Shown piece by piece: positions 1 to 24,000 of a stretch of 64,000 nt of DNA (its first letter is position 1; each line of letters opens with the position of its first letter). The notes beneath the pieces are model-generated. The model made no database searches. It had not been told where the DNA came from and saw only the letters and a program-made list of their open reading frames with translations. The translations under genes and the position numbers were made by a program. Source of the stretch: Haplodiscus bocki (Eukaryota); the NCBI GenBank assembly GCA_965655095.1, contig OZ296651.1, forward strand, positions 5,518,001-5,582,000, read 5' to 3'.

Positions 1-3000
1 GGTTCGGAAAAGTGTTCGGAGCAGCTATTTTATGGATACTCGAGTGCGGTGGCATCGCATATTCGCACTACACAAGGCGCTCACAAATCTGCAACACTGA
101 ATCTGCGTGACGTTAGCCTTTTTTTGGAAAAGGAAGAAAAAGTCCACTGCTGCATTGCTTTTCTTCGTTTTGAAAAGTTTTTTCGACGGAAAATAATGAG
201 TTTGATCCTGAGAGGTTGTACATTGACTTTAACGCCTGTGTAAAAGTCGAAAATGAAGTCATTTTCAGTTTTCACTACTTTAGGTTTTCCATGTCGATTC
301 CGATGCGAGTTACAAACCTCACGCTTCTTTTCTCTACGGGCCTTCTATAAATTGAGTGTTGTCTAGGAACTTGTTGGTTGATTGTCAGTCTGTATTCTCA
401 GTGCAAATTGAAATTCTTTCGTTGCTTTTTCTACTTCTAGGCTTTAGGGGTAAATCGGGGCTCTGATGCAAATAAAAAAATCCGAGGTTTTTTCTGGAAA
501 AACTTTGATAGTGGAAAGTCAGCCGGTTGTTTTGGAGGGAAAATATAGGTATCGATGAAAACCACTAATTTTGCCGTTTTTGGCAGATAAAGCTTGCAAT
601 GCAGACAAGATGTTTCGGACTATGTTTTTTGAGTAAACCATTCGTAAAGAAGAATGTCGACTGGGACCTTGATAAGGGAAATCCAGTCAGTAATTTTGAA
701 GAATTGTAAGTTTGGCTTCCGCGGAGATTTAATACTTCATTTCTTCGCAATATCCTGTCATCAGTTTTCCTATGCAATTAACCAACCGAAGCTTTAATGT
801 ACAAACTTTCTGCAAGTAGAGAGATTCCGATTTGGACTGTGATGAAAGTAATCTAGCTCGTAGTTTTTGAAGGAAAGTAGTTTGAATATTAAAAACAATC
901 ATGCACGAACGAAAATTTTCACAATATAGGCTTTTCTGAGGTTTCGCTACAAAGGTGCAAAACCAGGATGTATAATTGAATCGTTAGTGGAGGAAGTCGT
1001 GCTGTTTTCCGGAGAATAGTGTGGTTGCATTTTGGGGGAATGTTATTGCTCTCTGCACTTGTTGACATAATATTTCTACAAACTTTTCGATGCCACGAAA
1101 CTGACCGAACTTTTTATTTTTCATACCCTCTACCTGCAGAAAATCGACTGAGACGTTGACAGTGGAAAATTATGTTTCTTCTCGAGGACAATCATTACTT
1201 ATTGCAATTTAAGGCGGTTTCATTCCCTCAGTTTTGCGATAGATGGAACTTAAGACAAGATAGTCTGTTTCCGAACGACGTCCTGCAAGTAGAAAAGGCA
1301 GATTTGGATTCTTTTGAAGAAATTTTCAGCTACTTGCTGAGAAAATTTACTTCATAAACTGAGAATGCACAAATGCCTTTTCAACAATTGGCCTCTTCCT
1401 CGTATGAAATTGTGGTACCACGACCAAAAGAGTTTCATTGAAATACCTTCTGCAAGTTCAAAACTGTCGACTGAGACCTTGGTGGGAGAGTTCCAATTGG
1501 CAGTCTGGCAGGAATGTGATTCTGAATAGCGAGATCAAAAAATACCATGTTTTTGGGCTTGTCGATCTATAGGGACTACAGATTGATATGGTCAAGGCCA
1601 AGTTTTTTGTTTCAGTTTCGATGAACGAACAATATTCAGATGATTGCAGCAGTTTCAAAAATCCAAAATTTTCAGACACTCGGAAGATTTGTCCGTTTTT
1701 TGTTTTAAAAAGCATCAATCCATACCTTCCCTCAACTTTTTGAGGAAGTTTTTCTGAAAGTTTCTGAGGTTCGGTTATATTTCGACTTCTCCGAAAATTT
1801 TAACCTCTTTATGAAAAAAATGATTTGCATTCACAAAACTTGTCGTGTCAAAGTTCGATGGAAAAAAGGAGAATCTTTGGAAAGCGAAAGTAAATTGTTG
1901 GACAACCCCAGACGTAATCGAGGAGAACATCTTATTTTGATACGAAAGAATCCCACAATGTATGAAACGTATGTGAAAAAAAATCGGTTCGGAAAAGTGT
2001 TCGGAGCCGCTATTTTAGGGATACTCGAGTGCGGTGACATCGCATATTCGCACTACACAAGGCGCTCACAAATCTGCAACACTGAATCTGCGTGACGTTA
2101 GCCTTTTTTTGGAAAAGGAAGAAAAAGTTCACTGCTTCATTGCTTTTCTTCGTTTTGAAAAGTTTTTTCGACGAAAAATAATGATGATCCTGAGAGGTTG
2201 TACATTGACTTTAACGCCTGTGTAAAAGTCGAAAATGAAGTCATTTTCAGTTTTCACTACTTTAGGTTTTCCATGTCGATTCCGATGCGAGTTACAAACC
2301 TCACGCTTCTTTTCTCTACGGGCCTTCTATAAATTGAGTGTTGTCTAGGAACTTGTTGGTTGATTGTCAGTCTGTATTCTCAGTGCAAATTGAAATTCTT
2401 TCGTTGCTTTTTCTACTTCTAGGCTTTAGGGGTAAATCGGGGCTCTGATGCAAATAAAAAAATCCGAGGTTTTTTCTGGAAAAACTTTGATAGTGGAAAG
2501 TCAGCCGGTTGTTTTGGAGGGAAAATATAGGTATCGATGAAAACCACTAATTTTGCCGTTTTTGGCAGATAAAGCTTGCAATGCAGACAAGATGTTTCGG
2601 ACTATGTTTTTTGAGTAAACCATTCGTAAAGAAGAATGTCGACTGGGACCTTGATAAGGGAAATCCAGTCAGTAATTTTGAAGAATTGTAAGTTTGGCTT
2701 CCGCGGAGATTTAATACTTCATTTCTTCGCAATATCCTGTCATCAGTTTTCCTATGCAATTAACCAACCGAAGCTTTAATGTACAAACTTTCTGCAAGTA
2801 GAGAGATTCCGATTTGGACTGTGATGAAAGTAATCTAGCTCGTAGTTTTTGAAGGAAAGTAGTTTGAATATTAAAAACAATCATGCACGAACGAAAATTT
2901 TCACAATATAGGCTTTTCTGAGGTTTCGCTACAAAGGTGCAAAACCAGGATGTATAATTGAATCGTTAGTGGAGGAAGTCGTGCTGTTTTCCGGAGAATA

Positions 3001-6000
3001 GTGTGGTTGCATTTTGGGGGAATGTTATTGCTCTCTGCACTTGTTGACATAATATTTCTACAAACTTTTCGATGCCACGAAACTGACCGAACTTTTTATT
3101 TTTCATACCCTCTACCTGCAGAAAATCGACTGAGACGTTGACAGTGGAAAATTATGTTTCTTCTCGAGGACAATCATTACTTATTGCAATTTAAGGCGGT
3201 TTCATTCCCTCAGTTTTGCGATAGATGGAACTTAAGACAAGATAGTCTGTTTCCGAACGACGTCCTGCAAGTAGAAAAGGCAGATTTGGATTCTTTTGAA
3301 GAAATTTTCAGCTACTTGCTGAGAAAATTTACTTCATAAACTGAGAATGCACAAATGCCTTTTCAACAATTGGCCTCTTCCTCGTATGAAATTGTGGTAC
3401 CACGACCAAAAGAGTTTCATTGAAATACCTTCTGCAAGTTCAAAACTGTCGACTGAGACCTTGGTGGGAGAGTTCCAATTGGCAGTCTGGCAGGAATGTG
3501 ATTCTGAATAGCGAGATCAAAAAATACCATGTTTTTGGGCTTGTCGATCTATAGGGACTACAGATTGATATGGTCAAGGCCAAGTTTTTTGTTTGAGTTT
3601 CGATGAACGAACAATATTCAGATGATTGCAGCAGTTTCAAAAATCCAAAATTTTCAGACACTCGGAAGATTTGTCCGTTTTTTGTTTTAAAAAGCATCAA
3701 TCCATACCTTCCCTCAACTTTTTGAGGAAGTTTTTCTGAAAGTTTCTGAGGTTCGGTTATATTTCGACTTCTCCGAAAATTTTAACCTCTTTATGAAAAA
3801 AATGATTTGCATTCACAAAACTTGTCGTGTCAAAGTTCGATGGAAAAAAGGAGAATCTTTGGAAAGCGAAAGTAAATTGTTGGACAACCCCAGACGTAAT
3901 CGAGGAGAACATCTTATTTTGATACGAAAGAATCCCACAATGTCTGAAACTTTTGTAAAAAAAAATCGGTTCGGAAAAGTGTTCGGAGCAGCTATTTTAG
4001 GGATACTCGAGTGCGGTGGCATCGCATATTCGCACTACACAAGGCGCTCACAAATCTGCAACACTGAATCTGCGTGACGTTAGCCTTTTTTTGGAAAAGG
4101 AAGAGAAAGTCCACTGCTGCATTGCTTTTCTTCGTTTTGAAAAGTTTTTTCGACGGAAAATAATGAGTTTGATCCTGAGAGGTTGTACATTGACTTTAAC
4201 GCCTGTGTAAAAGTCGAAAATGAAGTCATTTTCAGTTTTCACTACTTTAGGTTTTCCATGTCGATTCCGATGCGAGTTACAAACCTCACGCTTCTTTTCT
4301 CTACGGGCCTTCTATAAATTGAGTGTTGTCTAGGAACTTGTTGGTTGATTGTCAGTCTGTATTCTCAGTGCAAATTGAAATTCTTTCGTTGCTTTTTCTA
4401 CTTCTAGGCTTTATGGGTAAATCGGGGCTCTGATGCAAATAAAAAAATCCGAGGTTTTTTCTGGAAAAACTTTGATAGTGGAAAGTCAGCCGGTTGTTTT
4501 GGAGGGAAAATATAGGTATCGATGAAAACCACTAATTTTGCCGTTTTTGGCAGATAAAGCTTGCAATGCAGACAAGATCTTTCGGACTATGTTTTTTGAG
4601 TAAACCATTCGTAAAGAAGAATGTCGACTGGGACCTTGATAAGGGAAATCCAGTCAGTAATTTTGAAGAATTGTAAGTTTGGCTTCCGCGGAGATTTAAT
4701 ACTTCATTTCTTCGCAATATCCGGTCATCAGTTTTCCTATGCAATTAACCAACCGAAGCTTTGATGTACAAACTTTCTGCAAGTAGAGAGATTCCGATTT
4801 GGACTGTGATGAAAGTAATCTAGCTCGTAGTTTTTGAAGGAAAGTAGTTTGAATATTAAAAACAATCATGCACGAACGAAAATTTTCACAATATAGGCTT
4901 TTCTGAGGTTTCGCTACAAAGGTGCAAAACCAGGATGTATAATTGAATCGTTAGTGGAGGAAGTCGTGCTGTTTTCCGGAGAATAGTGTGGTTGCATTTT
5001 GGGGGAATGTTATTGCTCTCTGCACTTGTTGACATAATATTTCTACAAACTTTTCGATGCCACGAAACTGACCGAACTTTTTATTTTTCATACCCTCTAC
5101 CTGCAGAAAATCGACTGAGACGTTGACAGTGGAAAATTATGTTTCTTCTCGAGGACAATCATTACTTATTGCAATTTAAGGCGGTTTCATTCCCTCAGTT
5201 TTGCGATGGATGGAACTTAAGACAAGATGGTCTGTTTTCGAACGACGTCCTGCAAGTAGAAAAGGCAGATTTGGATTCTTTTGAAGAAATTTTCAGCTAC
5301 TTGCTGAGAAAATTTACTTCATAAACTGAGAATGCACAAATGCATTTTCAACAATTGGCCTCTTCCTCGTATGAAATTGTGGTACCACGACCAAAAGAGT
5401 TTCATTGAAATACCTTCTGCAAGTTCAAAACTGTCGACTGAGACCTTGGTGGGAGAGTTCCAATTGGCAGTCTGGCAGGAATGTGCTTCTGAATAGCGAG
5501 ATCAAAAAATACCATGTTTTTGGGCTTGTCGATCTATAGGGACTACAGATTGATATGGTCAATGCCAAGTTTTTTGTTTGAGTTTCGATGAACGAACAAT
5601 ATTCAGATGATTGCAGCAGTTTCAAAAATCCAAAATTTTCAGACACTCGGAAGATTTGTCCGTTTTTTGTTTTAAAAAGCATCAATCCATACCTTCTCTC
5701 AACTTTTTGAGGAAGTTTTTTTGAGGAAGTTTCTGAGGTTCGGTTATCTTTCGACATCTCCGAAAATTTTAACCTCTTCATGAAAAAATGATTTGCATTC
5801 ACAAAATTTGTCGTGTCAAAGTTCGATGGAAAAAAGGAGAATCTTCGGAAAGCGAAAATTAATTGTTGGACAACCCCAGACGTAATCGAGGACAACATCT
5901 TATTTTGATACGAAAGAATCCCACAATGTATGAAACTTTTGTAAAAAAAAATCGGTTCGGAAATGTGTTCGGAGCAGCTATTTTAGGGATACTCGAGTGC

Positions 6001-9000
6001 AGTGACATCGCATATTCGCACTACAGAAGGCGCTCACAAATCTGCAACACGGAATCTGCGTGACCTTAGCCTTTTTTTGGAAAAGGAAGAAAAATTTCAC
6101 TGCTGCATTGCTTTTCTTCGTTTTGAAAAGTTTTTTCGACGGAAAATAATGAGTTTGATCCTGAGAGGTTGTACTTTGACTTTAACGCCTGTGTAAAAGT
6201 CAAAAGTGAAGTCATTTTCAGTTTTCACTACTTTAGATTTTCCATGTCGCTTCCGATGCGAGTTACAAACCTGACGCTTCTTTTCTCTACGGGCCTTCTA
6301 CAAAATGCGTGTTGTCTAGGAACTTGTTGGTTGATTGTCAGTCTATATTCTCAGAGCAAATTGAAATTCCTTCGTTGCTTTTTCTACTTCTAGGCTTTAT
6401 GGATAAATCGGGACTCTGATGCAAAATAAAAAAATCCGGGGTTTTATCTGGTAAAACGTTGTTAGCGGAAAGTCAGCCGGTTGTTTTGGAGGGAAAATAT
6501 AGGTATCGATGAAAACCACTAATTTTGCCATTTTTGGCAGATAAAGCTTGCACTGCAGACAAGATCTTTCGGACTATGTTTTTTGAGTAAACCATACGTA
6601 AAGAAGAATGTCGACTGGGACCTTGATAAGGGAAATCCAGTCAGTAATTTTGAAGAATTGTAAGTTTGGCTTCCGCGGAGATTTAATACTTCATTTCTTC
6701 GCAATATCCGGTCATCGGTTTTCCGATGCAATTAACCAACCGAAGCTTTATTGTACAAACCTTCTGCTACTGGAGAGATTCCGATTTGGACTATGATGAA
6801 ACTAATCTAGCTCGTTGTTTTTGAAGGAAAGGAGTTTGAATATTAAAAACAATCATGCACTAACGGAAATTTTCGCAATATAGGCTTTTCTGAGGTTTCG
6901 CTACAAAGGTGCAAAACCAGGATGTATAATTGAATCGTTAGTGGAGGAAGTCGTGCTGTTTTCCGGAGATTAGTGTGGTTGCATTTTGGGGGAATGTTAT
7001 TGCTCTCTGCACTTGTTGACATAATATTTCTACAAACTTTTCGATGCCACGAAACTGACCGAACTTTTTATTTTTCATACCCTCTACCTGCAGAAAATCG
7101 ACTGAGACGTTGACAGTGGAAAATTATGTTTCTTCTCGAGGACAATCATTACTTATTGCAATTTAAGGCGGTTTCATTCCCTCAGTTTTGCGATGGATGG
7201 AACTTAAGACAAGATGGTCTGTTTTCGAACGACGTCCTGCAAGTAGAAAAGGCAGATTTGGATTCTTTTGAAGAAATTTTCAGCTACTTGCTGAGAAAAT
7301 TTACTTCATAAACTGAGAATGCACAAATGCATTTTCAACAATTGGCCTCTTCCTCGTATGAAATTGTGGTACCACGACCAAAAGAGTTTCATTGAAATAC
7401 CTTCTGCAAGTTCAAAACTGTCGACTGAGACCTTGGTGGGAGAGTTCCAATTGGTAGTCTGGCAGGAATGTGATTTTGAATAGCGAGATCAAAAAATGCC
7501 ATGTTTTCGGGCTTGTCGATCTTTAGGGACTACATATTGATATGGTCAATGCCAAGTTTTTTGTTTGAGTTTTGATGAACGAACAATATTCAAATGATTG
7601 CAGCAGTTTCAAAATTCCAAAATTTTCAGACACTCGGAAGATTTGTCCGTTTTTTGTTTTAAAAAGCATCAATCCATACCTTCTCTCAACTTTTTGAGGA
7701 AGTTTTTGTGAAAGTTTCTGAGGTTCGGTTATCTTTCGACATCTCCGAAAATTTTAACCTCTTTATGAAAAAAATGATTTGCATTCACAAAATTTGTCGT
7801 GTCAAAGTTCGATGGAAAAGAGGAGAATCTTTGGAAAGCGAAAGTAAATTGTTGGACAACCCCAGACGTAATCGAGGAGAACATCTTATTTTGATACGAA
7901 AGAATCCCACAATGTATGAAACTTTTGTAAAAAAAAATCGGTTCGGAAAAATGTTCGGAGCAGCTATTTTATGGATACTCGAGTGCGGTGGCATCGCATA
8001 TTCGCACTACACAAGGCGCTCACAAATCTGCAACACTGAATCTGCGTGACGTTAGCCTTTTTTTGGAAAAGGAAGAAAAAGTCCACTGCTGCATTGCTTT
8101 TCTTCGTTTTGAAAAGTTTTTTGGACGGAAAATAATGAGTTTGATCCTGAGAGGTTGTACATTGACTTTAACGCCTGTGTAAAAGTCGAAAATGAAGTCA
8201 TTTTCAGTTTTCACTACTTTAGGTTTTCCATGTCGATTCCGATGCGAGTTACAAACCTCACGCTTCTTTTCTCTACGGGCCTTCTATAAATTGAGTGTTG
8301 TCTAGGAACTTGTTGGTTGATTGTCAGTGTGTATTCTCAGTGCAAATTGAAATTCTTTCGTTGCTTTTTCTACTTCTAGGCTTTATGGGTAAATCGGGGC
8401 TCTGATGCAAATAAAAAAATCCGAGGTTTTTTCTGGAAAAACTTTGATAGCGGAAAGTCAGCCGGTTGTTTTGGAGGGAAAATATAGGTATCGATGAAAA
8501 CCACTAATTTTGCCGTTTTTGGCAGATAAAGCTTGCAATGCAGACAAGATATTTCGGACTATGTTTTTTGAGTAAACCATTCGTAAAGAAGAATGTCGAC
8601 TGGGACCTTGATAAGGGAAATCCAGTCAGTAATTTTGAAGAATTGTAAGTTTGGCTTCCGCGGAGATTTAATACTTCATTTCTTCGCAATATCCGGTCAT
8701 CAGTTTTCCTATGCAATTAACCAACCGAAGCTTTAATGTACAAACTTTCTGCAAGTAGAGAGATTCCGATTTGGACTGTGATGAAAGTAATCTAGCTCGT
8801 AGTTTTTGAAGGAAAGTAGTTTGAATATTAAAAACAATCATGCACGAACGAAAATTTTCACAATATAGGCTTTTCTGAGGTTTCGCTACAAAGGTGCAAA
8901 ACCAGGATGTATAATTGAATCGTTAGTGGAGGAAGTCGTGCTGTTTTCCGGAGAATAGTGTGGTTGCATTTTGGGGGAATGTTATTGCTCTCTGCACTTG

Positions 9001-12000
9001 TTGACATAATATTTCTACAAACTTTTCGATGCCACGAAACTGACCGAACTTTTTATTTTTCATACCCTCTACCTGCAGAAAATCGACTGAGACGTTGACA
9101 GTGGAAAATTATGTTTCTTCTCGAGGACAATCATTACTTATTGCAATTTAAGGCGGTTTCATTCCCTCAGTTTTGCGATGGATGGAACTTAAGACAAGAT
9201 AGTCTGTTTCCGAACGACGTCCTGCAAGTAGAAAAGGCAGATTTGGATTCTTTTGAAGAAATTTTCAGCTACTTGCTGAGAAAATTTACTTCATAAACTG
9301 AGAATGCACAAATGCATTTTCAACAATTGGCCTCTTCCTCGTATGAAATTGTGGTACCACGACCAAAAGAGTTTCATTGAAATACCTTCTGCAAGTTCAA
9401 AACTGTCGACTGAGACCTTGGTGGGAGAGTTCCAATTGGCAGTCTGGCAGGAATGTGATTTTGAATAGCGAGATCAAAAAATGCCATGTTTTCGGGCTTG
9501 TCGATCTTTAGGGACTACATATTGATATGGTCAATGCCAAGTTTTTTGTTTGAGTTTTGATGAACGAACAATATTCAAATGATTGCAGCAGTTTCAAAAT
9601 TCCAAAATTTTCAGACACTCGGAAGATTTGTCCGTTTTTTGTTTTAAAAAGGATCAATCCATACCTTCTCTCAACTTTTTGAGGAAGTTTTTGTGGAAGT
9701 TTCTGAGGTTCGGTTATCTTTCGACTTCTCCGAAAATTTTAACCTCTTTATGAAAAAAATGATTTGCATTCACAAAATTTGTCGTGTCAAAGTTCGATGG
9801 AAAAGAGGAGAATCTTTGGAAAGCGAAAGTAAATTGTTGGACAACCCCAGACGTAATCGAGGAGAACATCTTATTTTGATACGAAAGAATCCCACAATGT
9901 ATGAAACTTTTGTAAAAAAAATCGGTTCGGAAAAATGTTCGGAGCAGCTATTTTATGGATACTCGAGTGCGGTGGCATCGCATATTCGCACTACACAAGG
10001 CGCTCACAAATCTGCAACACTGAATCTGCGTGACGTTAGCCTTTTTTTGGAAAAGGAAGAAAAAGTCCACTGCTGCATTGCTTTTCTTCGTTTTGAAAAG
10101 TTTTTTCGACGGAAAATAATGAGTTTGATCCTGAGAGGTTGTACATTGACTTTAACGCCTGTGTAAAAGTCGAAAATGAAGTCATTTTCAGTTTTCACTA
10201 CTTTAGGTTTTCCATGTCGATTCCGATGCGAGTTACAAACCTCACGCTTCTTTTCTCTACGGGCCTTCTATAAATTGAGTGTTGTCTAGGAACTTGTTGG
10301 TTGATTGTCAGTGTGTATTCTCAGTGCAAATTGAAATTCTTTCGTTGCTTTTTCTACTTCTAGGCTTTATGGGTAAATCGGGGCTCTGATGCAAATAAAA
10401 AAATCCGAGGTTTTTTCTGGAAAAACTTTGATAGCGGAAAGTCAGCCGGTTGTTTTGGAGGGAAAATATAGGTATCGATGAAAACCACTAATTTTGCCGT
10501 TTTTGGCAGATAAAGCTTGCAATGCAGACAAGATATTTCGGACTATGTTTTTTGAGTAAACCATTCGTAAAGAAGAATGTCGACTGGGACCTTGATAAGG
10601 GAAATCCAGTCAGTAATTTTGAAGAATTGTAAGTTTGGCTTCCGCGGAGATTTAATACTTCATTTCTTCGCAATATCCGGTCATCAGTTTTCCTATGCAA
10701 TTAACCAACCGAAGCTTTAATGTACAAACTTTCTGCAAGTAGAGAGATTCCGATTTGGACTGTGATGAAAGTAATCTAGCTCGTAGTTTTTGAAGGAAAG
10801 TAGTTTGAATATTAAAAACAATCATGCACGAACGAAAATTTTCACAATATAGGCTTTTCTGAGGTTTCGCTACAAAGGTGCAAAACCAGGATGTATAATT
10901 GAATCGTTAGTGGAGGAAGTCGTGCTGTTTTCCGGAGAATAGTGTGGTTGCATTTTGGGGGAATGTTATTGCTCTCTGCACTTGTTGACATAATATTTCT
11001 ACAAACTTTTCGATGCCACGAAACTGACCGAACTTTTTATTTTTCATACCCTCTACCTGCAGAAAATCGACTGAGACGTTGACAGTGGAAAATTATGTTT
11101 CTTCTCGAGGACAATCATTACTTATTGCAATTTAAGGCGGTTTCATTCCCTCAGTTTTGCGATGGATGGAACTTAAGACAAGATAGTCTGTTTCCGAACG
11201 GCGTCCTGCAAGTAGAAAAGGCAGATTTGGATTCTTTTGAAGAAATTTTCAGCTACTTGCTGAGAAAATTTACTTCATAAACTGAGAATGCACAAATGCA
11301 TTTTCAACAATTGGCCTCTTCCTCGTATGAAATTGTGGTACCACGACCAAAAGAGTTTCATTGAAATACCTTCTGCAAGTTCAAAACTGTCGACTGAGAC
11401 CTTGGTGGGAGAGTTCCAATTGGCAGTCTGGCAGGAATGTGATTTTGAATAGCGAGATCAAAAAATGCCATGTTTTCGGGCTTGTCGATCTTTAGGGACT
11501 ACATATTGATATGGTCAATGCCAAGTTTTTTGTTTGAGTTTTGATGAACGAACAATATTCAAATGATTGCAGCAGTTTCAAAATTCCAAAATTTTCAGAC
11601 ACTCGGAAGATTTGTCCGTTTTTTGTTTTAAAAAGGATCAATCCATACCTTCTCTCAACTTTTTGAGGAAGTTTTTGTGGAAGTTTCTGAGGTTCGGTTA
11701 TCTTTCGACTTCTCCGAAAATTTTAACCTCTTTATGAAAAAAATGATTTGCATTCACAAAATTTGTCGTGTCAAAGTTCGATGGAAAAAAGGAGAATCTT
11801 TGGAAAGCGAAAGTAAATTGTTGGACAACCCCAGACGTAATCGAGGAGAACATCTTATTTTGATACGAAAGAATCCCACAATGTATGAAACTTTTGTAAA
11901 AAAAAAATCGGTTCGGAAAAGTGTTCGGAGCAGCTATTTTAGGGATACTCGAGTGCGGTGGCATCGCATATTCGCACTACACAAGGCGCTCACAAATCTG

Positions 12001-15000
12001 CAACACTGAATCTGCGTGAGGTTAGCCTTTTTTTTGGAAAAGGAAGAAAAAGTCCACTGCTGCATTGCTTTTCTTCGTTTTGAAAAGTTTTTTCGACGGA
12101 AAATAATGAGTTTGATCCTGAGAGGTTGTACATTGACTTTAACGCCTGTGTAAAAGTCGAAATTGAAGTCATTTTCAGTTTTCACTACTTTAGGTTTTCC
12201 ATGTCGATTCCGATGCGAGTTACAAACCTCACGCTTCTCTTCTCTACGGGCCTTCTATAAATTGAGTGTTGTCTAGGAACTTGTTGGTTGATTGTCAGTC
12301 TGTATTCTCAGTGCAAATTGAAATTCTTTCGTTGCTTTTTCTACTTCTAGGCTTTATGGGTAAATCGGGGCTCTGATGCAAATAAAAAAATCCGAGGTTT
12401 TTTCTGGAAAAACTTTGATAGCGGAAAGTCAGCCGGTTGTTTTGGAGGGAAAATATAGGTATCGATGAAAACCACTAATTTTGCCGTTTTTGGCAGATAA
12501 AGCTTGCAATGCAGACAAGATCTTTCGGACTATGTTTTTTGAGTAAACCATTCGTAAAGAAGAATGTCGACTGGGACCTTGATAAGGGAAATCCAGTCAG
12601 TAATTTTGAAGAATTGTAAGTTTGGCTTCCGCGGAGATTTAATACTTCATTTCTTCGCAATATCCGGTCATCAGTTTTCCTATGCAATTAACCAACCGAA
12701 GCTTTAATGTACAAACTTTCTGCAAGTAGAGAGATTCCGATTTGGACTGTGATGAAAGTAATCTAGCTCGTAGTTTTTGAAGGAAAGTAGTTTGAATATT
12801 AAAAACAATCATGCACGAACGAAAATTTTCACAATATAGGCTTTTCTGAGGTTTCGCTACAAAGGTGCAAAACCAGGATGTATAATTGAATCGTTAGTGG
12901 AGGAAGTCGTGCTGTTTTCCGGAGAATAGTGTGGTTGCATTTTGGGGGAATGTTATTGCTCTCTGCACTTGTTGACATAATATTTCTACAAACTTTTCGA
13001 TGCCACGAAACTGACCGAACTTTTTATTTTTCATACCCTCTACCTGCAGAAAATCGACTGAGACGTTGACAGTGGAAAATTATGTTTCTTCTCGAGGACA
13101 ATCATTACTTTTTGCAATTTAATACTGTTTCATTCCCTCAGTTTTGCGATGGACGGAACTTAAGACAAGATAGTCTGTTTCCGAACGACGTCCTACAAGT
13201 AGAAAAGGCAGATTTGGATTCTTTTGAAGAAATTTTCAGCTGCTTGCTGAGAAAATTTACTTCATAAACTGAGAATGCACAAATGCATTTTCAACAATCG
13301 GCCTCTTCCTCGTATTAAATTGTGGTACCACGACCAAAAGAGTTTCATTGAAATACCTTCTGCAAGTTCAAAACTGTCGACTGAGACCTTGGTGGGAGAG
13401 TTCCAATTGGCAGTCTGGCAGGAATGTGATTCTGAATAGCGAGATCAAAAAATACCATGTTTTTGGGCTTGTCGATCTATAGGGACTACAGATTGATATG
13501 GTCAAGGCCAAGTTTTTTGTTTGAGTTTCGATGAACGAACAATATTCAGATGATTGCAGCAGTTTCAAAAATCCAAAATTTTCAGACACTCGGAAGATTT
13601 GTCCGTTTTTTGTTTTAAAAAGCATCAATCCATACCTTCTCTCAACTTTTTGAGGAAGTTTTTTTGAAAGTTTCTGAGGTTCGGTTATCTTTCGACATCT
13701 CCGAAAATTTTAACCTCTTCATGAAAAAATGATTTGCATTCACAAAATTTGTCGTGTCAAAGTTCGATGGAAAAAAGGAGAATCTTCGGAAAGCGAAAAT
13801 AAATTGTTGGACAACCCCAGACGTAATCGAGGAGAACATCTTATTTTGATACGAAAGAATCCCACAATGTATGAAACTTTTGTAAAAAAAAATCGGTTCG
13901 GAAATGTGTTCGGCGCAGCTATTTTAGGGATACTCGATCGAGTGCAGTGACATCGCATATTCGCACTACAGAAGGCGCTCACAAATCTGCAACACGGAAT
14001 CTGCGTGACCTTAGCCTTTTTTTGGAAAAGGAAGAAAAATTTCACTGCTGCATTGCTTTTCTTCGTTTTGAAAAGTTTTTTCGACGGAAAATAATGAGTT
14101 TGATCCTGAGAGGTTGTACTTTGACTTTAACGCCTGTGTAAAAGTCAAAAGTGAAGTCATTTTCAGTTTTCACTACTTTAGATTTTCCATGTCGCTTCCG
14201 ATGCGAGTTACAAACCTGACGCTTCTTTTCTCTACGGGCCTTCTACAAATTGCGTGTTGTCTAGGAACTTGTTGGTTGATTGTCAGTCTATATTCTCAGA
14301 GCAAATTGAAATTCCTTCGTTGCTTTTTCTACTTCTAGGCTTTATGGATAAATCGGGACTCTGATGCAAAATAAAAAAATCCGGGGTTTTATCTGGTAAA
14401 ACGTTGTTAGCGGAAAGTCAGCCGGTTGTTTTGGAGGGAAAATATAGGTATCGATGAAAACCACTAATTTTGCCGTTTTTGGCAGATAAAGCTTGCAATG
14501 CAGACAAGATATTTCGGACTATGTTTTTTGAGTAAACCATTCGTAAAGAAGAATGTCGACTGGGACCTTGATAAGGGAAATCCAGTCAGTAATTTTGAAG
14601 AATTGTAAGTTTGGCTTCCGCGGAGATTTAATACTTCATTTCTTCGCAATATCCGGTCATCAGTTTTCCTATGCAATTAACCAACCGAAGCTTTAATGTA
14701 CAAACTTTCTGCAAGTAGAGAGATTCCGATTTGGACTGTGATGAAAGTAATCTAGCTCGTAGTTTTTGAAGGAAAGTAGTTTGAATATTAAAAACAATCA
14801 TGCACGAACGAAAATTTTCACAATATAGGCTTTTCTGAGGTTTCGCTACAAAGGTGCAAAACCAGGATGTATAATTGAATCGTTAGTGGAGGAAGTCGTG
14901 CTGTTTTCCGGAGAATAGTGTGGTTGCATTTTGGGGGAATGTTATTGCTCTCTGCACTTGTTGACATAATATTTCTACAAACTTTTCGATGCCACGAAAC

Positions 15001-18000
15001 TGACCGAACTTTTTATTTTTCATACCCTCTACCTGCAGAAAATCGACTGAGACGTTGACAGTGGAAAATTATGTTTCTTCTCGAGGACAATCATTACTTA
15101 TTGCAATTTAAGGCGGTTTCATTCCCTCAGTTTTGCGATGGATGGAACTTAAGACAAGATGGTCTGTTTTCGAACGACGTCCTGCAAGTAGAAAAGGCAG
15201 ATTTGGATTCTTTTGAAGAAATTTTCAGCTACTTGCTGAGAAAATTTACTTCATAAACTGAGAATGCACAAATGCATTTTCAACAATTGGCCTCTTCCTC
15301 GTATGAAATTGTGGTACCACGACCAAAAGAGTTTCATTGAAATACCTTCTGCAAGTTCAAAACTGTCGACTGAGACCTTGGTGGGAGAGTTCCAATTGGT
15401 AGTCTGGCAGGAATGTGATTTTGAATAGCGAGATCAAAAAATGCCATGTTTTCGGGCTTGTCGATCTTTAGGGACTACATATTGATATGGTCAATGCCAA
15501 GTTTTTTGTTTGAGTTTTGATGAACGAACAATATTCAAATGATTGCAGCAGTTTCAAAATTCCAAAATTTTCAGACACTCGGAAGATTTGTCCGTTTTTT
15601 GTTTTAAAAAGCATCAATCCATACCTTCTCTCAACTTTTTGAGGAAGTTTTTGTGGAAGTTTCTGAGGTTCGGTTATCTTTCGACTTCTCCGAAAATTTT
15701 AACCTCTTTATGAAAAAAATGATTTGCATTCACAAAATTTGTCGTGTCAAAGTTCGATGGAAAAAAGGAGAATCTTTGGAAAGCGAAAGTAAATTGTTGG
15801 ACAACCCCAGACGTAATCGAGGAGAACATCTTATTTTGATACGAAAGAATCCCACAATGTATGAAACTTTTGTAAAAAAAAATCGGTTCGGAAAAGTGTT
15901 CGGAGCAGCTATTTTAGGGATACTCGAGTGCGGTGGCATCGCATATTCGCACTACACAAGGCGCTCACAAATCTGCAACACTGAATCTGCGTGACGTTAG
16001 CCTTTTTTTGGAAAAGGAAGAAAAAGTCCACTGCTGCATTGCTTTTCTTCGTTTTGAAAAGTTTTTTCGACGGAAAATAATGAGTTTGATCCTGAGAGGT
16101 TGTACATTGACTTTAACGCCTGTGTAAAAGTCGAAATTGAAGTCATTTTCAGTTTTCACTACTTTAGGTTTTCCATGTCGATTCCGATGCGAGTTACAAA
16201 CCTCACGCTTCTCTTCTCTACGGGCCTTCTATAAATTGAGTGTTGTCTAGGAACTTGTTGGTTGATTGTCAGTCTGTATTCTCAGTGCAAATTGAAATTC
16301 TTTCGTTGCTTTTTCTACTTCTAGGCTTTATGGGTAAATCGGGGCTCTGATGCAAATAAAAAAATCCGAGGTTTTTTCTGGAAAAACTTTGATAGCGGAA
16401 AGTCAGCCGGTTGTTTTGGAGGGAAAATATAGGTATCGATGAAAACCACTAATTTTGCCGTTTTTGGCAGATAAAGCTTGCAATGCAGACAAGATCTTTC
16501 GGACTATGTTTTTTGAGTAAACCATTCGTAAAGAAGAATGTCGACTGGGACCTTGATAAGGGAAATCCAGTCAGTAATTTTGAAGAATTGTAAGTTTGGC
16601 TTCCGCGGAGATTTAATACTTCATTTCTTCGCAATATCCGGTCATCAGTTTTCCTATGCAATTAACCAACCGAAGCTTTAATGTACAAACTTTCTGCAAG
16701 TAGAGAGATTCCGATTTGGACTGTGATGAAAGTAATCTAGCTCGTAGTTTTTGAAGGAAAGTAGTTTGAATATTAAAAACAATCATGCACGAACGAAAAT
16801 TTTCACAATATAGGCTTTTCTGAGGTTTCGCTACAAAGGTGCAAAACCAGGATGTATAATTGAATCGTTAGTGGAGGAAGTCGTGCTGTTTTCCGGAGAA
16901 TAGTGTGGTTGCATTTTGGGGGAATGTTATTGCTCTCTGCACTTGTTGACATAATATTTCTACAAACTTTTCGATGCCACGAAACTGACCGAACTTTTTA
17001 TTTTTCATACCCTCTACCTGCAGAAAATCGACTGAGACGTTGACAGTGGAAAATTATGTTTCTTCTCGAGGACAATCATTACTTATTGCAATTTAAGGCG
17101 GTTTCATTCCCTCAGTTTTGCGATGGATGGAACTTAAGACAAGATAGTCTGTTTCCGAACGACGTCCTGCAAGTAGAAAAGGCAGATTTGGATTCTTTTG
17201 AAGAAATTTTCAGCTACTTGCTGAGAAAATTTACTTCATAAACTGAGAATGCACAAATGCATTTTCAACAATTGGCCTCTTCCTCGTATGAAATTGTGGT
17301 ACCACGACCAAAAGAGTTTCATTGAAATACCTTCTGCAAGTTCAAAACTGTCGACTGAGACCTTGGTGGGAGAGTTCCAATTGGCAGTCTGGCAGGAATG
17401 TGATTCTGAATAGCGAGATCAAAAAATACCATGTTTTTGGGCTTGTCGATCTATAGGGACTACAGATTGATATGGTCAAGGCCAAGTTTTTTGTTTGAGT
17501 TTCGATGAACGAACAATATTCAGATGATTGCAGCAGTTTCAAAAATCCAAAATTTTCAGACACTCGGAAGATTTGTCCGTTTTTTGTTTTAAAAAGCATC
17601 AATCCATACCTTCTCTCAACTTTTTGAGGAAGTTTTTTTGAAAGTTTCTGAGGTTCGGTTATCTTTCGACATCTCCGAAAATTTTAACCTCTTCATGAAA
17701 AAATGATTTGCATTCACAAAATTTGTCGTGTCAAAGTTCGATGGAAAAAAGGAGAATCTTCGGAAAGCGAAAATAAATTGTTGGACAACCCCAGACGTAA
17801 TCGAGGAGAACATCTTATTTTGATACGAAAGAATCCCACAATGTATGAAACTTTTGTAAAAAAAAATCGGTTCGGAAATGTGTTCGGCGCAGCTATTTTA
17901 GGGATACTCGAGTGCAGTGACATCGCATATTCGCACTACAGAAGGCGCTCACAAATCTGCAACACGGAATCTGCGTGACCTTAGCCTTTTTTTGGAAAAG

Positions 18001-21000
18001 GAAGAAAAATTTCACTGCTGCATTGCTTTTCTTCGTTTTGAAAAGTTTTTTCGACGGAAAATAATGAGTTTGATCCTGAGAGGTTGTACTTTGACTTTAA
18101 CGCCTGTGTAAAAGTCAAAAGTGAAGTCATTTTCAGTTTTCACTACTTTAGATTTTCCATGTCGCTTCCGATGCGAGTTACAAACCTGACGCTTCTTTTC
18201 TCTACGGGCCTTCTACAAATTGCGTGTTGTCTAGGAACTTGTTGGTTGATTGTCAGTCTATATTCTCAGAGCAAATTGAAATTCCTTCGTTGCTTTTTCT
18301 ACTTCTAGGCTTTATGGATAAATCGGGACTCTGATGCAAAATAAAAAAATCCGGGGTTTTATCTGGTAAAACGTTGTTAGCGGAAAGTCAGCCGGTTGTT
18401 TTGGAGGGAAAATATAGGTATCGATGAAAACCACTAATTTTGCCATTTTTGGCAGATAAAGCTTGCACTGCAGACAAGATCTTTCGGACTATGTTTTTTG
18501 AGTAAACCATACGTAAAGAAGAATGTCGACTGGGACCTTGATAAGGGAAATCCAGTCAGTAATTTTGAAGAATTGTAAGTTTGGCTTCCGCGGAGATTTA
18601 ATACTTCATTTCTTCGCAATATCCGGTCATCGGTTTTCCGATGCAATTAACCAACCGAAGCTTTATTGTACAAACCTTCTGCTACTGGAGAGATTCCGAT
18701 TTGGACTATGATGAAACTAATCTAGCTCGTTGTTTTTGAAGGAAAGGAGTTTGAATATTAAAAACAATCATGCACTAACGGAAATTTTCGCAATATAGGC
18801 TTTTCTGAGGTTTCGCTACAAAGGTGCAAAACCAGGATGTATAATTGAATCGTTAGTGGAGGAAGTCGTGCTGTTTTCCGGAGAATAGTGTGGTTGCATT
18901 TTGGGGGAATGTTATTGCTCTCTGCACTTGTTGACATAATATTTCTACAAACTTTTCGATGCCACGAAACTGACCGAACTTTTTATTTTTCATACCCTCT
19001 ACCTGCAGAAAATCGACTGAGACGTTGACAGTGGAAAATTATGTTTCTTCTCGAGGACAATCATTACTTATTGCAATTTAAGGCGGTTTCATTCCCTCAG
19101 TTTTGCGATGGATGGAACTTAAGACAAGATGGTCTGTTTTCGAACGACGTCCTGCAAGTAGAAAAGGCAGATTTGGATTCTTTTGAAGAAATTTTCAGCT
19201 ACTTGCTGAGAAAATTTACTTCATAAACTGAGAATGCACAAATGCATTTTCAACAATTGCCCTCTTCCTCGTATGAAATTGTGGTACCACGACCAAAAGA
19301 GTTTCATTGAAATACCTTCTGCAAGTTCAAAACTGTCGACTGAGACCTTGGTGGGAGAGTTCCAATTGGTAGTCTGGCAGGAATGTGATTTTGAATAGCG
19401 AGATCAAAAAATGCCATGTTTTCGGGCTTGTCGATCTTTAGGGACTACATATTGATATGGTCAATGCCAAGTTTTTTGTTTGAGTTTTGATGAACGAACA
19501 ATATTCAAATGATTGCAGCAGTTTCAAAATTCCAAAATTTTCAGACACTCGGAAGATTTGTCCGTTTTTTGTTTTAAAAAGCATCAATCCATACCTTCTC
19601 TCAACTTTTTGAGGAAGTTTTTGTGGAAGTTTCTGAGGTTCGGTTATCTTTCGACTTCTCCGAAAATTTTAACCTCTTTATGAAAAAAATGATTTGCATT
19701 CACAAAATTTGTCGTGTCAAAGTTCGATGGAAAAAAGGAGAATCTTTGGAAAGCGAAAGTAAATTGTTGGACAACCCCAGACGTAATCGAGGAGAACATC
19801 TTATTTTGATACGAAAGAATCCCACAATGTATGAAACTTTTGTAAAAAAAAACGGTTCGGAAAAGTGTTCGGAGCAGCTATGTTAGGGATACTCGAGTGC
19901 GGTGACATCGCATAATCGCACTACACAAAGCGCTCACAAATCTGCAACACTGAATCTGCGTGACGTTAGCCTTTTTTTTGGAAAAGGAAGAAAAAGTCCA
20001 CTGCTGCATTGCTTTTCTTCGTTTTGAAAAGTTTTTTCGACGGAAAATAATGAGTTTGATCCTGAGAGGTTGTACATTGACTTTAACGCCTGTGTAAAAG
20101 TGAAAAATGAAGTCATTTTCAGTTTTCACTACTTTAGATTTTCCATGTCGCTTCCGATGCGAGTTACAAAGCTGACGCTTCTTTTCTCTACGGGCCTTCT
20201 ACAAATTGAGTGTTGTCTAGGAACTTGTTGGTTGATTGTCAGTCTATATTCTCAGAGCAAATTGAAATTCCTTCGTTGCTTTTTCTACTTCTAGGCTTTA
20301 TGGGTAAATCGGGACTCTGATGCAAAATAAAAAAATCCGAGGTTTTATCTGGTAAAACGTTGTTAGCGGAAAGTCAGTCGGTTGTTTTGGAGGGAAAATA
20401 TAGGTATCGATGAAAACCACTAATTTTGCCATTTTTTGGCAGATAAAGCTTGCAATGCAGACAAGATCTTTCGGACTATGTTTTTTGAGTGAACCATACG
20501 TAAAGAAGAATGTCGACTGGGAACTTGATAAGGGAAATCCAGTCAGTAATTTTGAAGAATTGTAAGTTTGGCTTCCGCGGAGATTTAATACTTCATTTCT
20601 TCGCAATATCCGGTCATCAGTTTTCCTATGCAATTAACCAACCGAAGCTTTATTGTACAAACCTTTTGCAACTGGAGAGATTCCGATTTGGACTATGATG
20701 AAACTAATCTAGCTCGTTGTTTTTGAAGGAAAGGAGTTTGAATATTAAAAACAATCATGCACTAACGGAAATTTTCGCAATATAGGCTTTTCTGAGGTTT
20801 CGCTACAAAGGTGCAAAACCAGGATGTATAATTGAATCGTTAGTGGAGGAAGTCGTGCTGTTTTCCGGAGAATAGTGTGGTTGCATTTTGGGGGATTGTT
20901 ATTGCTCTCTGCACTTGTTGACATAATATTTCTACAAACTTTTCGGTGCCACGAAACTGACCGAACTTTTTACTTATCATACCCTCTACCTGCAGAAAAT

Positions 21001-24000
21001 CGACTGAGACGTTGACAGTGGAAAATTATGTTTCTTCTCGAGGACAATCATTACTTTTTGCAATTTAAGGCGGTTTCCTCCCCTCAGTTTTGCGATGGAT
21101 GGAACTTAAGACAAGATAGTCTGCTTCCGAACGACGTCCTACAAGTAGAAAAGGCCGATTTGGATTCATTTGAAGAAGTTTTGAGCTGCTTGCTGAGAAA
21201 ATTTACTTTATAAACTGAGAATGCACAAATGCATTTTTAACATTTGGCCGCTTCCTCGCATGAAATAGTGGTACCACGACCAAAAGAGTTTCATTGAAAT
21301 ACCTTCTGCAAGTTCAAAACTGTCGACTGAGACCTTGGTGGGAGAGTTCCAATTGGTAGTCTGGCAGGAATGTGATTTTGAATAGCGAGATCAAAAAATA
21401 CCATGTTTTCGGGCTTGTCGATCTATAGCGACTACAGATTGATATGGTCAAGGCCAAGTCTTTTGTTTGAGTTTTGATGAACGAACAATATTCAGATGAT
21501 TGCAGCAGTTTCAAAATTCCAAAATTTTCAGACACTCGGAAGATTTGTCCGTTTTTTGTTTTAAAAAGCATCAATCCATACCTTCTCTCAACTTTTTGAG
21601 GAAGTTTTTTTGAAAGTTTCTGAGGTTCGGTTATCTTTCGACATCTCCGAAAATTTTAACCTCTTCATGAAAAAATGATTTGCATTCACAAAATTTGTCG
21701 TGTCAAAGTTCGATGGAAAAAAGGAGAATCTTCGGAAAGCGAAAATAAATTGTTGGACAACCCCAGACGTAATCGAGGAGAACATCTTATTTTGATACGA
21801 AAGAATCCCACAATGTATGAAACTTTTGTAAAAAAAAATCGGTTCGGAAATGTGTTCGGCGCAGCTATTTTAGGGATACTCGAGTGCAGTGACATCGCAT
21901 ATTCGCACTACAGAAGGCGCTCACAAATCTGCAACACGGAATCTGCGTGACCTTAGCCTTTTTTTGGAAAAGGAAGAAAAATTTCACTGCTGCATTGCTT
22001 TTCTTCGTTTTGAAAAGTTTTTTCGACGGAAAATAATGAGTTTGATCCTGAGAGGTTGTACTTTGACTTTAACGCCTGTGTAAAAGTCAAAAGTGAAGTC
22101 ATTTTCAGTTTTCACTACTTTAGATTTTCCATGTCGCTTCCGATGCGAGTTACAAACCTGACGCTTCTTTTCTCTACGGGCCTTCTACAAATTGCGTGTT
22201 GTCTAGGAACTTGTTGGTTGATTGTCAGTCTATATTCTCAGAGCAAATTGAAATTCCTTCGTTGCTTTTTCTACTTCTAGGCTTTATGGATAAATCGGGA
22301 CTCTGATGCAAAATAAAAAAATCCGGGGTTTTATCTGGTAAAACGTTGTTAGCGGAAAGTCAGCCGGTTGTTTTGGAGGGAAAATATAGGTATCGATGAA
22401 AACCACTAATTTTGCCATTTTTGGCAGATAAAGCTTGCACTGCAGACAAGATCTTTCGGACTATGTTTTTTGAGTAAACCATACGTAAAGAAGAATGTCG
22501 ACTGGGACCTTGATAAGGGAAATCCAGTCAGTAATTTTGAAGAATTGTAAGTTTGGCTTCCGCGGAGATTTAATACTTCATTTCTTCGCAATATCCGGTC
22601 ATCGGTTTTCCGATGCAATTAACCAACCGAAGCTTTATTGTACAAACCTTCTGCTACTGGAGAGATTCCGATTTGGACTATGATGAAACTAATCTAGCTC
22701 GTTGTTTTTGAAGGAAAGGAGTTTGAATATTAAAAACAATCATGCACTAACGGAAATTTTCGCAATATAGGCTTTTCTGAGGTTTCGCTACAAAGGTGCA
22801 AAACCAGGATGTATAATTGAATCGTTAGTGGAGGAAGTCGTGCTGTTTTCCGGAGAATAGTGTGGTTGCATTTTGGGGGAATGTTATTGCTCTCTGCACT
22901 TGTTGACATAATATTTCTACAAACTTTTCGATGCCACGAAACTGACCGAACTTTTTATTTTTCATACCCTCTACCTGCAGAAAATCGACTGAGACGTTGA
23001 CAGTGGAAAATTATGTTTCTTCTCGAGGACAATCATTACTTATTGCAATTTAAGGCGGTTTCATTCCCTCAGTTTTGCGATGGATGGAACTTAAGACAAG
23101 ATGGTCTGTTTTCGAACGACGTCCTGCAAGTAGAAAAGGCAGATTTGGATTCTTTTGAAGAAATTTTCAGCTACTTGCTGAGAAAATTTACTTCATAAAC
23201 TGAGAATGCACAAATGCATTTTCAACAATTGCCCTCTTCCTCGTATGAAATTGTGGTACCACGACCAAAAGAGTTTCATTGAAATACCTTCTGCAAGTTC
23301 AAAACTGTCGACTGAGACCTTGGTGGGAGAGTTCCAATTGGTAGTCTGGCAGGAATGTGATTTTGAATAGCGAGATCAAAAAATGCCATGTTTTCGGGCT
23401 TGTCGATCTTTAGGGACTACATATTGATATGGTCAATGCCAAGTTTTTTGTTTGAGTTTTGATGAACGAACAATATTCAAATGATTGCAGCAGTTTCAAA
23501 ATTCCAAAATTTTCAGACACTCGGAAGATTTGTCCGTTTTTTGTTTTAAAAAGCATCAATCCATACCTTCTCTCAACTTTTTGAGGAAGTTTTTGTGGAA
23601 GTTTCTGAGGTTCGGTTATCTTTCGACTTCTCCGAAAATTTTAACCTCTTTATGAAAAAAATGATTTGCATTCACAAAATTTGTCGTGTCAAAGTTCGAT
23701 GGAAAAAAGGAGAATCTTTGGAAAGCGAAAGTAAATTGTTGGACAACCCCAGACGTAATCGAGGAGAACATCTTATTTTGATACGAAAGAATCCCACAAT
23801 GTATGAAACTTTGGAAAAAAAAATCGGTTCGGAAAAGTGTTCGGAGCAGCTATTTTAGGGATACTCGAGTGCGGTGACATCGCTTATTCGCACCACACAA
23901 GGCGCTCACAAATCTGCAACACTGAATCTGCGTGACGTTTGCCTTTTTTTGGGAAAGGAAGAAAAAGTCCACTGCTGCATTGCTTTTCTTCGTTTTGAAA

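What the first reader, a model, noticed from the sequence alone, without database searches (positions are those of the whole stretch)
480..1530. Hidden ~155-170-bp subrepeat inside the 2-kb unit (repeat within a repeat)
Seen: a degenerate motif recurs at ~495 (AACTTTGATAGTGGAAAGTCAGCC), 657 (TCGACTGGGACCTTGATAAGGGAAATCCAG), 826 (CCGATTTGGACTGTGATGAAAGTAATCTAG), ~990 (weak), 1144 (TCGACTGAGACGTTGACAGTGGAAA), 1300 (CAGATTTGGATTCTTTTGAAGAAA) and 1467 (TCGACTGAGACCTTGGTGGGAGAG). Most are preceded by CTGCAAGT/CTGCAGAA. Inference: the 1985-bp unit is roughly a 12-mer higher-order repeat of a very old, nucleosome-sized monomer, architecturally like alpha-satellite HORs but far more diverged.
Basis: partly seen in the sequence, partly recalled or inferred. 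Interest (0 to 1): 0.75.

Follow-up and report, generated by a model that had tools for sequence, protein, structure and literature searches.

The report
Transposon-derived satellite with inherited inner repeats
The hidden ~160-base repeat inside the 2-kb satellite unit is real, but it is an eight-copy block inherited from a common ~4-kb non-coding mobile element, a piece of which was copied head-to-tail; this is a known way for satellite DNA to arise and not a centromere-style 12-mer.

Summary
Window 1-35818 is a tandem array of a 1985-bp unit.

A plain base-by-base autocorrelation at 155-175 bp is not significant, but more sensitive tests are decisive:
- The seven best self-alignments all have lags that are multiples of ~162 bp.
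- Leave-one-out profiles recover five of seven monomers at E 2e-6 or better, and a sixth weakly.
- A profile rebuilt only from copies elsewhere in the genome finds eight consecutive monomers (unit 342-1574) at 16-72 bits. The best of 300 shuffles scores 10.4 bits.

The "12-mer higher-order repeat" reading is only partly right. The monomers fill about two thirds of the unit. The remaining ~640 bp is not monomeric.

The order monomer array, ~390-bp spacer, ~180-bp "head" recurs on many chromosomes. It lies inside a dispersed, old (65-82% identity), non-coding element of about 1.4-4 kb with defined ends. Unit monomers match dispersed monomers position by position.

So the 2-kb satellite is an amplified internal fragment of one such element, and its inner periodicity was inherited. 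The element's class is unresolved; it looks Helentron/HINE-like.

Earlier notes of this scan report similar kb-scale satellites on other DNA of this genome. This is an ordinary kind with a new example.

The parts
1..35818 (+). Tandem array of the 1985-bp unit. There are 18 units in the window. The last unit is cut at unit position 77. The array continues upstream of the window to at least C4:5426213, for a total of >= 128 kb.
   Evidence: Seed hits every 1982-1990 bases. The array end is mapped by blastn. Upstream copies are shown.
15..199 (+). 'Head' segment of the dispersed element. It is the most conserved non-monomer part. Homology to dispersed copies stops at about unit 200.
   Evidence: Alignment A3. 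The head profile hits every unit at about 146-165 bits, and also independent loci. Read contigs run off as loose ends at 164 and 196-203.
201..332 (+). Unassigned junction stretch between the head and the first monomer. It holds a non-significant partial monomer match at 255-318.
   Evidence: No blastn match to ~200 kb of dispersed copies. The profile match scores 4.6-4.8 bits, a level reached by 18 of 300 shuffles.
342..486 (+).
   Evidence: 16.3 bits, E 6.7e-6, with the profile built from dispersed copies. Its 3' part aligns with the copies on C2, C6 and C9.
501..607 (+).
   Evidence: 37.8 bits. Leave-one-out E 2.7e-4. Positional counterpart of monomer 2 in the C9 and C2 copies.
648..787 (+).
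   Evidence: 71.9 bits. Leave-one-out E 7.3e-9. Counterpart in the C9 and C2 copies.
804..969 (+).
   Evidence: 67.7 bits. Leave-one-out E 1.6e-8.
975..1108 (+).
   Evidence: 27.3 bits, E 2.8e-9, with the dispersed-copy profile. Not recovered by leave-one-out within the unit.
1125..1262 (+).
   Evidence: 44.8 bits. Leave-one-out E 2e-6.
1273..1422 (+).
   Evidence: 24.0 bits. Leave-one-out E 0.02.
1438..1574 (+). It is the counterpart of the last monomer, next to the spacer, in dispersed copies.
   Evidence: 72.1 bits. Leave-one-out E 3.4e-8. Best cross-scores of 36-50 are with the spacer-proximal monomer of the C1, C3, C9, L035 and L042 copies.
1601..1985 (+). Spacer between the monomer block and the head. 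It is not monomeric. A spacer of about 380-390 bases sits at the same place in dispersed copies.
   Evidence: No monomer hit better than E 0.095. A collinear 1071-base alignment runs through head, spacer and first monomers between the C3 and C1 copies. Head-to-monomer distances are given.
36686..39060 (-). A separate dispersed copy of the element family just beyond the array, on the opposite strand. It has the 5' leader (38911-39060), about ten monomers (37271-38847) and the 3' end region (36686-36839). It has no head.
   Evidence: Profile hits. End sequences.
61068..62659 (-). Another old array of at least ten monomers of the same family.
   Evidence: Profile hits of 15-98 bits at ~170-base spacing.
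42251..42450 (-). An isolated 3'-end fragment of the element family.
   Evidence: 3'-end profile, 91.9 bits.

Best explanation
The ~160-base periodicity is real. It is a relic of an eight-monomer block of a ~172-base repeat, and that block is the internal tandem-repeat region of a dispersed, non-coding mobile element.

Full element copies are about 1.4-4 kb and are built in this order:
- a 5' leader of ~150 bases with a defined start;
- 7-13 diverged monomers, all in one orientation;
- a ~390-base spacer;
- a ~180-base head;
- 0.8-1 kb of 3' sequence ending in a palindrome and an A-rich end.

One copy, or a derivative that had lost 4-5 inner monomers, had an internal 1985-base piece duplicated head-to-tail. 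That piece runs from the first monomer to the end of the head. It was then expanded, presumably by unequal exchange, into an array of at least 128 kb. The array's units are now 95-99% alike.

Shown: the monomers, the shared architecture, the positional matches and the borders of homology.

Inferred: the direction (element first, satellite second), the duplication mechanism, and that the inner repeat has no function of its own in the array.

The element's class is open. Read on the opposite strand, its ends resemble Helentron-associated (HINE) non-autonomous elements.
For: Monomers:
- Self-hit lags are multiples of ~162.
- Leave-one-out profiles recover the monomers.
- Eight monomers score 16-72 bits with a profile trained only on other loci, against a shuffle maximum of 10.4 bits.

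Dispersed family:
- The unit-derived monomer profile finds head-to-tail runs of 6-12 hits at 150-180-base spacing on C1, C2, C3, C5, C6, C7, C9 and elsewhere.
- Eleven loci were picked by head similarity alone. Ten carry runs of five or more monomers upstream of the head. The eleventh, L036, a 2.48-kb deletion variant, carries one.
- L013 was picked by monomer similarity alone, and it carries an independent head 380 bases downstream.
- The head query had 3398 first-look candidates, and all 40 that were scored matched.

Defined ends:
- A common 5' start is seen in 9-10 loci.
- A common 3' end with a palindrome is seen in 11 loci.
- Copies with both ends are 4.0, 2.48, 1.37 and 2.4 kb long.

Positional matches:
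- Unit monomers 2-4 match the first monomers of the C9, C2 and C1 copies, and unit monomer 8 matches the last.

Borders and ages:
- The unit lacks the leader and the 3' kilobase.
- Homology to the family stops at unit ~200, and contigs from reads break there.
- Dispersed copies are 65-82% alike, while array units are 95-99% alike.
Against: - The left edge of the array was not seen, so no parent copy was caught grading into the array.
- About 130 bases of the unit (201-332) are unaccounted for.
- Copy number is only a lower bound, because just 40 hits are scored per search.
- The element's mobility rests on defined ends and dispersal. No empty site, clear target-site duplication or autonomous partner was found.
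- The profile was seeded from the unit's own monomers, although the final training set excluded the array.
Confidence: 0.85

Rival explanations
1. The 2-kb unit is an alpha-satellite-like higher-order repeat that arose in place from a monomeric, nucleosome-length satellite. The dispersed copies are unrelated remnants or secondary.
For: Diverged monomers sit inside near-identical long units, as in higher-order repeats. Earlier scan notes report several kb-scale satellites built of 158-180-base monomers in this genome.
Against: - One third of the unit is not monomeric.
- The non-monomer parts (spacer and head) accompany the monomers in the same order at many unlinked loci.
- The array edge at 35818 abuts non-satellite DNA.
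- No monomeric satellite of this family was among the best genome hits.
Confidence: 0.06
2. The direction is reversed. The satellite came first, and pieces of it were picked up and spread by a mobile element or by segmental dispersal.
For: Mobile elements can capture satellite monomers. The direction is inferred here, not observed.
Against: - Dispersed copies are much older (65-82% identity) than the homogenised array.
- They hold more monomers (up to 12-13) than the unit.
- They carry a leader and a 3' part that are absent from the unit.
- The unit looks like a deleted derivative of them.
Confidence: 0.04
3. The monomers are hammerhead-ribozyme repeats (animal 'retrozymes'), which are known as tandem repeats in corals.
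For: Corals carry thousands of type I hammerhead repeats in tandem, low-GC arrays (PMC7229834).
Against: - No Rfam family, hammerheads included, matches the window at gathering score.
- None matches six loci at E 0.01 or three monomer-rich loci at E 10.
- The monomer is ~172 bases, against 220-240 for coral retrozymes.
Confidence: 0.02
4. The periodic motif reflects repeated exons of a gene or pseudogene, or is a chance recurrence.
For: Splice-site-like strings (a CAG before the motif, GTAAGT after one copy) and a recurring short peptide on the minus strand were noticed by eye.
Against: - Stops occur in all six frames of the family profile's majority sequence.
- The conservation profile has no period-3 signal (p = 0.93).
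- Unit ORFs have no Pfam match.
- Chance is excluded by the shuffles and by the independent loci.
Confidence: 0.01

Closest known systems
Helentron-associated interspersed elements (HINEs) with central satellite-like repeats: Cg_HINE in Crassostrea gigas, pearl, DTC84, DINE-1/DINE-TR1 (PMC7492417, PMC3879986, PMC4067079)
   Same: - It is a non-coding dispersed element with a central array of ~140-180-base monomers in a fixed orientation.
- An 11-base motif near one end recurs inverted at the other end.
- There are palindromes beside these motifs, and the boundaries are T/A-rich.
- Such elements are known to seed satellites.
   Different: - The arrays here are longer (7-13 monomers, against mostly 2-5).
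- The monomers are strongly diverged and position-specific.
- About 1.5 kb of extra non-repeat sequence is present (spacer, head, 3' part).
- The hairpins are weak in these old copies.
- No TT target, empty site or Rep/helicase partner was shown.
- No microsatellite was seen.
Satellites made by tandem copying of a transposon fragment (reviewed in PMC12628747)
   Same: A long satellite unit consists of an internal piece of one mobile element, amplified and homogenised. [quoted passage not shown]
   Different: The amplified piece here already contained an old tandem array, so the satellite mimics a higher-order repeat.
Alpha-satellite higher-order repeats of primate centromeres
   Same: Diverged ~170-base monomers sit inside near-identical multi-monomer units.
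   Different: - The unit is not an integer set of monomers, since about a third is other sequence.
- Monomers are far more diverged (~50% identity, against 60-80%).
- No monomeric flanks were found.
- There is no evidence of centromere function.
- The array sits ~5.5 Mb from the start of a 121-Mb sequence.
SVA-type composite retroposons (own knowledge)
   Same: It is a non-coding composite element with an internal variable-number tandem-repeat block, an A-rich 3' end, and possible short flanking direct repeats in three copies.
   Different: - The A-rich end is a conserved motif rather than a poly(A) tail.
- The flanking repeats are ambiguous.
- No LINE partner is known.
- The monomers are 172 bases rather than 35-50.

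Membership tests
Alpha-satellite-like higher-order repeat | The unit consists wholly of an integer number of related monomers. | tested here: not met
   There are eight monomers in 342-1574. Unit 1601-1985 and 1-200 are not monomeric, and 201-332 is unassigned.
Alpha-satellite-like higher-order repeat | Monomers within a unit are diverged while whole units are near-identical. | tested here: met
   Monomers are 40-61% alike. Units are 95-99% alike.
Alpha-satellite-like higher-order repeat | The array is flanked by, or derived from, monomeric arrays of the same satellite. | tested here: inconclusive
   The right edge abuts other DNA. The best genome hits to a monomer pair are scattered single sites. 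The left edge could not be fetched.
Alpha-satellite-like higher-order repeat | Centromere association (CENP-A) or nucleosome phasing. | not testable with these tools
   No chromatin data were available.
HINE (Helentron non-autonomous element) | A central tandem-repeat array in fixed orientation between conserved flanks. | tested here: met
   Monomers always lie on the same strand as the head and the ends.
HINE (Helentron non-autonomous element) | Subterminal inverted repeats of 11-13 bases at both ends. | tested here: met
   The motif TATTTTTCGCC lies ~27 bases inside one end in most copies. Its reverse complement lies at the other end. This was read directly from the sequences.
HINE (Helentron non-autonomous element) | A short inverted repeat beside one subterminal repeat and a stem-loop after the other. 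| tested here: inconclusive
   An 18-base palindrome lies beside one motif, and a 5-bp GC stem lies beside the other in some copies. Fold z-scores range only from -0.85 to -1.8, and one copy does not fold at all.
HINE (Helentron non-autonomous element) | Insertion at TT without target-site duplication. | tested here: inconclusive
   Three complete copies show ambiguous 6-8-base A-rich direct repeats. No empty site was found.
HINE (Helentron non-autonomous element) | An autonomous Rep/helicase-endonuclease partner sharing the ends. | not tested
Earlier notes say Helitron-like elements abound in this genome, but their junction motif is absent from the array.
Animal retrozyme (hammerhead tandem repeats) | A type I hammerhead ribozyme in each monomer. 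| tested here: not met
   No hammerhead or other Rfam match was found.

The most novel reading that the evidence does not exclude
The dispersed element may be an undescribed cnidarian Helentron-type non-autonomous family. Its unusually long array keeps the order of its monomers across copies, perhaps as binding or positioning sites. The family might also be a recurrent seed of the several kb-scale 'higher-order-like' satellites that earlier notes report in this genome, with units of 1.4, 1.58, 1.67 and 1.99 kb.
Probability: 0.25. Interest if true: 0.5.

Novelty: new member of a known kind. Interest (0 to 1): 0.3.

Why it matters
It shows that a satellite can look like a centromere-style higher-order repeat simply because the amplified piece of a mobile element already carried an old tandem array. 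This is a caution for annotating candidate centromeres from sequence alone in corals and other non-model animals.

It also defines, with profiles and borders, a high-copy element family that could be used to mask and date repeats in this genome. The same profiles would let one test whether the genome's other kb-scale satellites share this origin.

Tried and rejected
- Base-by-base autocorrelation gave no significant peak at 155-175. It is too blunt for ~50% identical monomers with indels.
- Tandem Repeats Finder saw neither the 2-kb unit nor the monomers.
- RNA genes: no Rfam or tRNA hit in the window or loci. The tRNA-like look of the element's 3' part is therefore unconfirmed.
- Coding: no Pfam hit for unit ORFs, stops in all frames, and no period-3 signal.
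- I first read the dispersed copies as 5'-truncated LINE-type copies. I rejected this because 9-10 loci share one 5' start, and the C1 array is cut by an assembly gap, not by truncation.
- I first placed the unit's 5' border of homology at ~417-500 from blastn. The family profile moved it to ~342.
- The 1671-bp short unit is not an in-register loss of two monomers. Its breakpoints are ~29 bases out of register.
- Empty-site search: one flank is unique, and the other holds an unrelated 105-base repeat away from the insertion point.
- The Helitron-like junction motif from earlier notes is absent from the array.
- A fuzzy regex scan for the element ends timed out and was replaced by profiles.
- The protein atlas gave no usable lead for the 733-aa ORF.

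Full report
**What is in the window**

The window is eukaryote-like DNA with 38% G+C and no tRNA or Rfam match. It lies at C4:5518001-5582000 of a 1.5-Gb assembly. Earlier notes of this scan call the organism a coral; I did not verify that.

Positions 1-35818 are 18 head-to-tail copies of a 1985-bp unit. The array continues upstream of the window to at least C4:5426213, so it is at least 128 kb long, with units 95-99% alike. Short, very deep contigs from two samples of the same organism cover the unit, so it is a genuine high-copy repeat.

**Checking the observation**

The upstream CTGCAAGT or CTGCAGAA is present at four of them.

Circular autocorrelation of one unit has no significant peak there. 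Ungapped self-matches are only borderline.

That test is too blunt for monomers that are about half identical and differ by indels. Three other tests are clear.
- The seven best gapped self-alignments of the unit have lags 810, 640, 473, 487, 320, 651 and 169. All are within 13 bases of a multiple of 162. The next two are not.
- Profiles built from six monomers find the seventh, left-out one, in register, for five of seven (E 2.7e-4 for the first, 7.3e-9 to 2e-6 for four others). One more is weak at E 0.02, and the ~990 copy is missed.
- A profile rebuilt in three rounds from 264 monomers found in other loci, with no unit of this array in the training set, finds eight consecutive monomers. They lie at 342-486, 501-607, 648-787, 804-969, 975-1108, 1125-1262, 1273-1422 and 1438-1574, and score 16-72 bits. 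The best score in 300 dinucleotide shuffles of the unit is 10.4 bits.

The monomers are 40-61% identical to each other and 57-70% identical to the family profile's majority sequence.

**The unit is not a 12-mer**

No monomer is detectable in 1601-1985 or in 1-200. A match at 255-318 is at chance level. Monomers therefore make up about two thirds of the unit.

**Where the monomers come from**

A search of the whole genome with the unit returned scattered 65-82% identical pieces on many chromosomes.

The monomer profile, made only from the unit, finds head-to-tail runs of 6-12 hits in those loci at 150-180-base spacing. The period there is ~175 bases, a little longer than in the unit.

A ~180-base segment that matches unit 15-199, which I call the head, lies about 380-390 bases downstream of the last monomer in the same orientation.

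Two cross-checks are independent of how the loci were picked.
- L013 was found through monomer similarity alone. It has its own head at the expected place.
- Eleven loci were found through head similarity alone. Ten of them have runs of five or more monomers upstream of the head, and one deletion variant (L036) has a single monomer.

The head query had 3398 first-look candidates, and all 40 that were scored matched.

Two copies on different chromosomes align collinearly through head, spacer and the first monomers over 1071 bases. The window itself holds two more old copies on the minus strand, at 36686-39060 and 61068-62659.

**The dispersed copies are units of one element with defined ends**

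Nine to ten loci start their mutual similarity at the same sequence, with unrelated DNA before it. Eleven loci end at the same sequence, an 18-base palindrome followed by a short conserved A-rich motif, with unrelated DNA after it.

Copies with both ends measure 4.0 kb (C9), 2.48 kb (L036), 1.37 kb (L057) and 2.4 kb (window 36686-39060).

The full layout is: leader, 7-13 monomers, spacer, head, then 0.8-1 kb of 3' sequence. The unit of the array has neither the leader nor the 3' kilobase. Its similarity to the family stops at about unit 200. Read contigs that match unit 164-196 run off into other sequence exactly there.

**The monomers were already different from one another when the family spread**

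Unit monomers 2, 3 and 4 score best against the first monomers of the C9, C2 and C1 copies. Unit monomer 8 scores best against the last monomer, the one next to the spacer, of every copy tested.

The unit thus looks like a copy that lost four or five inner monomers. Combined with the age contrast (dispersed copies 65-82% alike, array units 95-99%), this makes element-first, satellite-second the simplest reading. An internal 1985-base piece of one copy was duplicated in tandem and then expanded and homogenised. The mechanism of that step is inferred, not shown.

**What kind of element it is**

It is non-coding. There are stops in all frames, no period-3 signal, and no Pfam hits. It carries no hammerhead ribozyme, so it is not a coral retrozyme (PMC7229834).

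An 11-base motif about 27 bases inside one end recurs as its reverse complement at the other end. A palindrome sits beside one copy of the motif and a short GC stem beside the other.

Read on the opposite strand, this is the layout described for Helentron-associated non-autonomous elements: subterminal inverted repeats, a nearby inverted repeat, central satellite-like repeats, a 3' stem-loop and T-rich boundaries (PMC4067079, PMC7492417). However, the hairpins are weak in these old copies. The three complete copies show ambiguous short A-rich direct repeats that could instead be target-site duplications of a retroposon. No empty site or autonomous partner was found.

I put Helentron/HINE-like at roughly 45%, a retroposon-type composite at 25%, and something else at 30%. 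The 3' part has B-box-like strings on the opposite strand, but no tRNA is called there.

**Comparison with what is known, and verdict**

Satellite-like arrays carried inside non-autonomous elements are well described, as are satellites made by tandem copying of transposon pieces (PMC7492417, PMC3879986, PMC12628747). Earlier notes of this scan report similar cases on other DNA of this genome; I did not test those.

The finding is a real and cleanly explained structure. It is a new example of a known kind, not an alpha-satellite-like 12-mer, and nothing links it to a centromere.

**Limits**

The array's left edge and more full-length copies were therefore not examined.
- Copy numbers are lower bounds.

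Noticed in passing
L031 (C4:5506000-5515999), upstream of the window; read joint 581->892 on window:1-4000: A short 1671-bp variant of the unit lacks unit 582-885 and alternates with full units. The same joint appears in contigs of run X1 at depth 191. The breakpoints share 6 bases and are ~29 bases out of monomer register, so this is a microhomology deletion rather than an in-register monomer exchange.
   Followed up: partly
L013:6100-6500 (-), L003:1800-1950 (+), L005:1050-1400 (-): The 3' part of dispersed copies carries one or two stretches that read on the opposite strand like tRNA T-arm and B-box sequence (GGTTCGAATCC-like). ARAGORN and Rfam call no tRNA there. It may be an old SINE nested in the ancestral element.
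   Followed up: partly
window 54628-55095 (-) and 55289-55705 (-): These ORF fragments match the DDE_1 endonuclease domain (E 7e-17) and helix-turn-helix domains. They look like a decayed pogo/Tigger-type transposase.
   Followed up: no
window 43818-46019 (+): A 733-codon open frame lies in a 46% G+C island. It has no Pfam match and no convincing protein-atlas neighbour (best score 0.84).
   Followed up: partly
window 39160-39265 (+): A ~105-base dispersed repeat (419 first-look candidates, 76-88% identity) lies just beside the minus-strand element copy.
   Followed up: no
window:1-4000, run X5 (organism B): A second organism label holds low-depth contigs that are 90-95% like parts of the monomer region and the head. 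The family or the satellite is therefore shared with a relative.
   Followed up: no
C9:61091619-61091830 (stitched C9 copy 11619-11830): In the 4.0-kb C9 copy the head is rearranged into two partial copies facing each other.
   Followed up: no
window 56468-56551 and 57043-57110: There are two short tandem repeats, of 42-base and 30-base units with about two copies each.
   Followed up: no
window 36134-36222 (+): A weak match (E 4.5e-4) to the element's 5' leader lies 315 bases after the array's truncated last head. It may be the start of yet another fragmentary copy.
   Followed up: no
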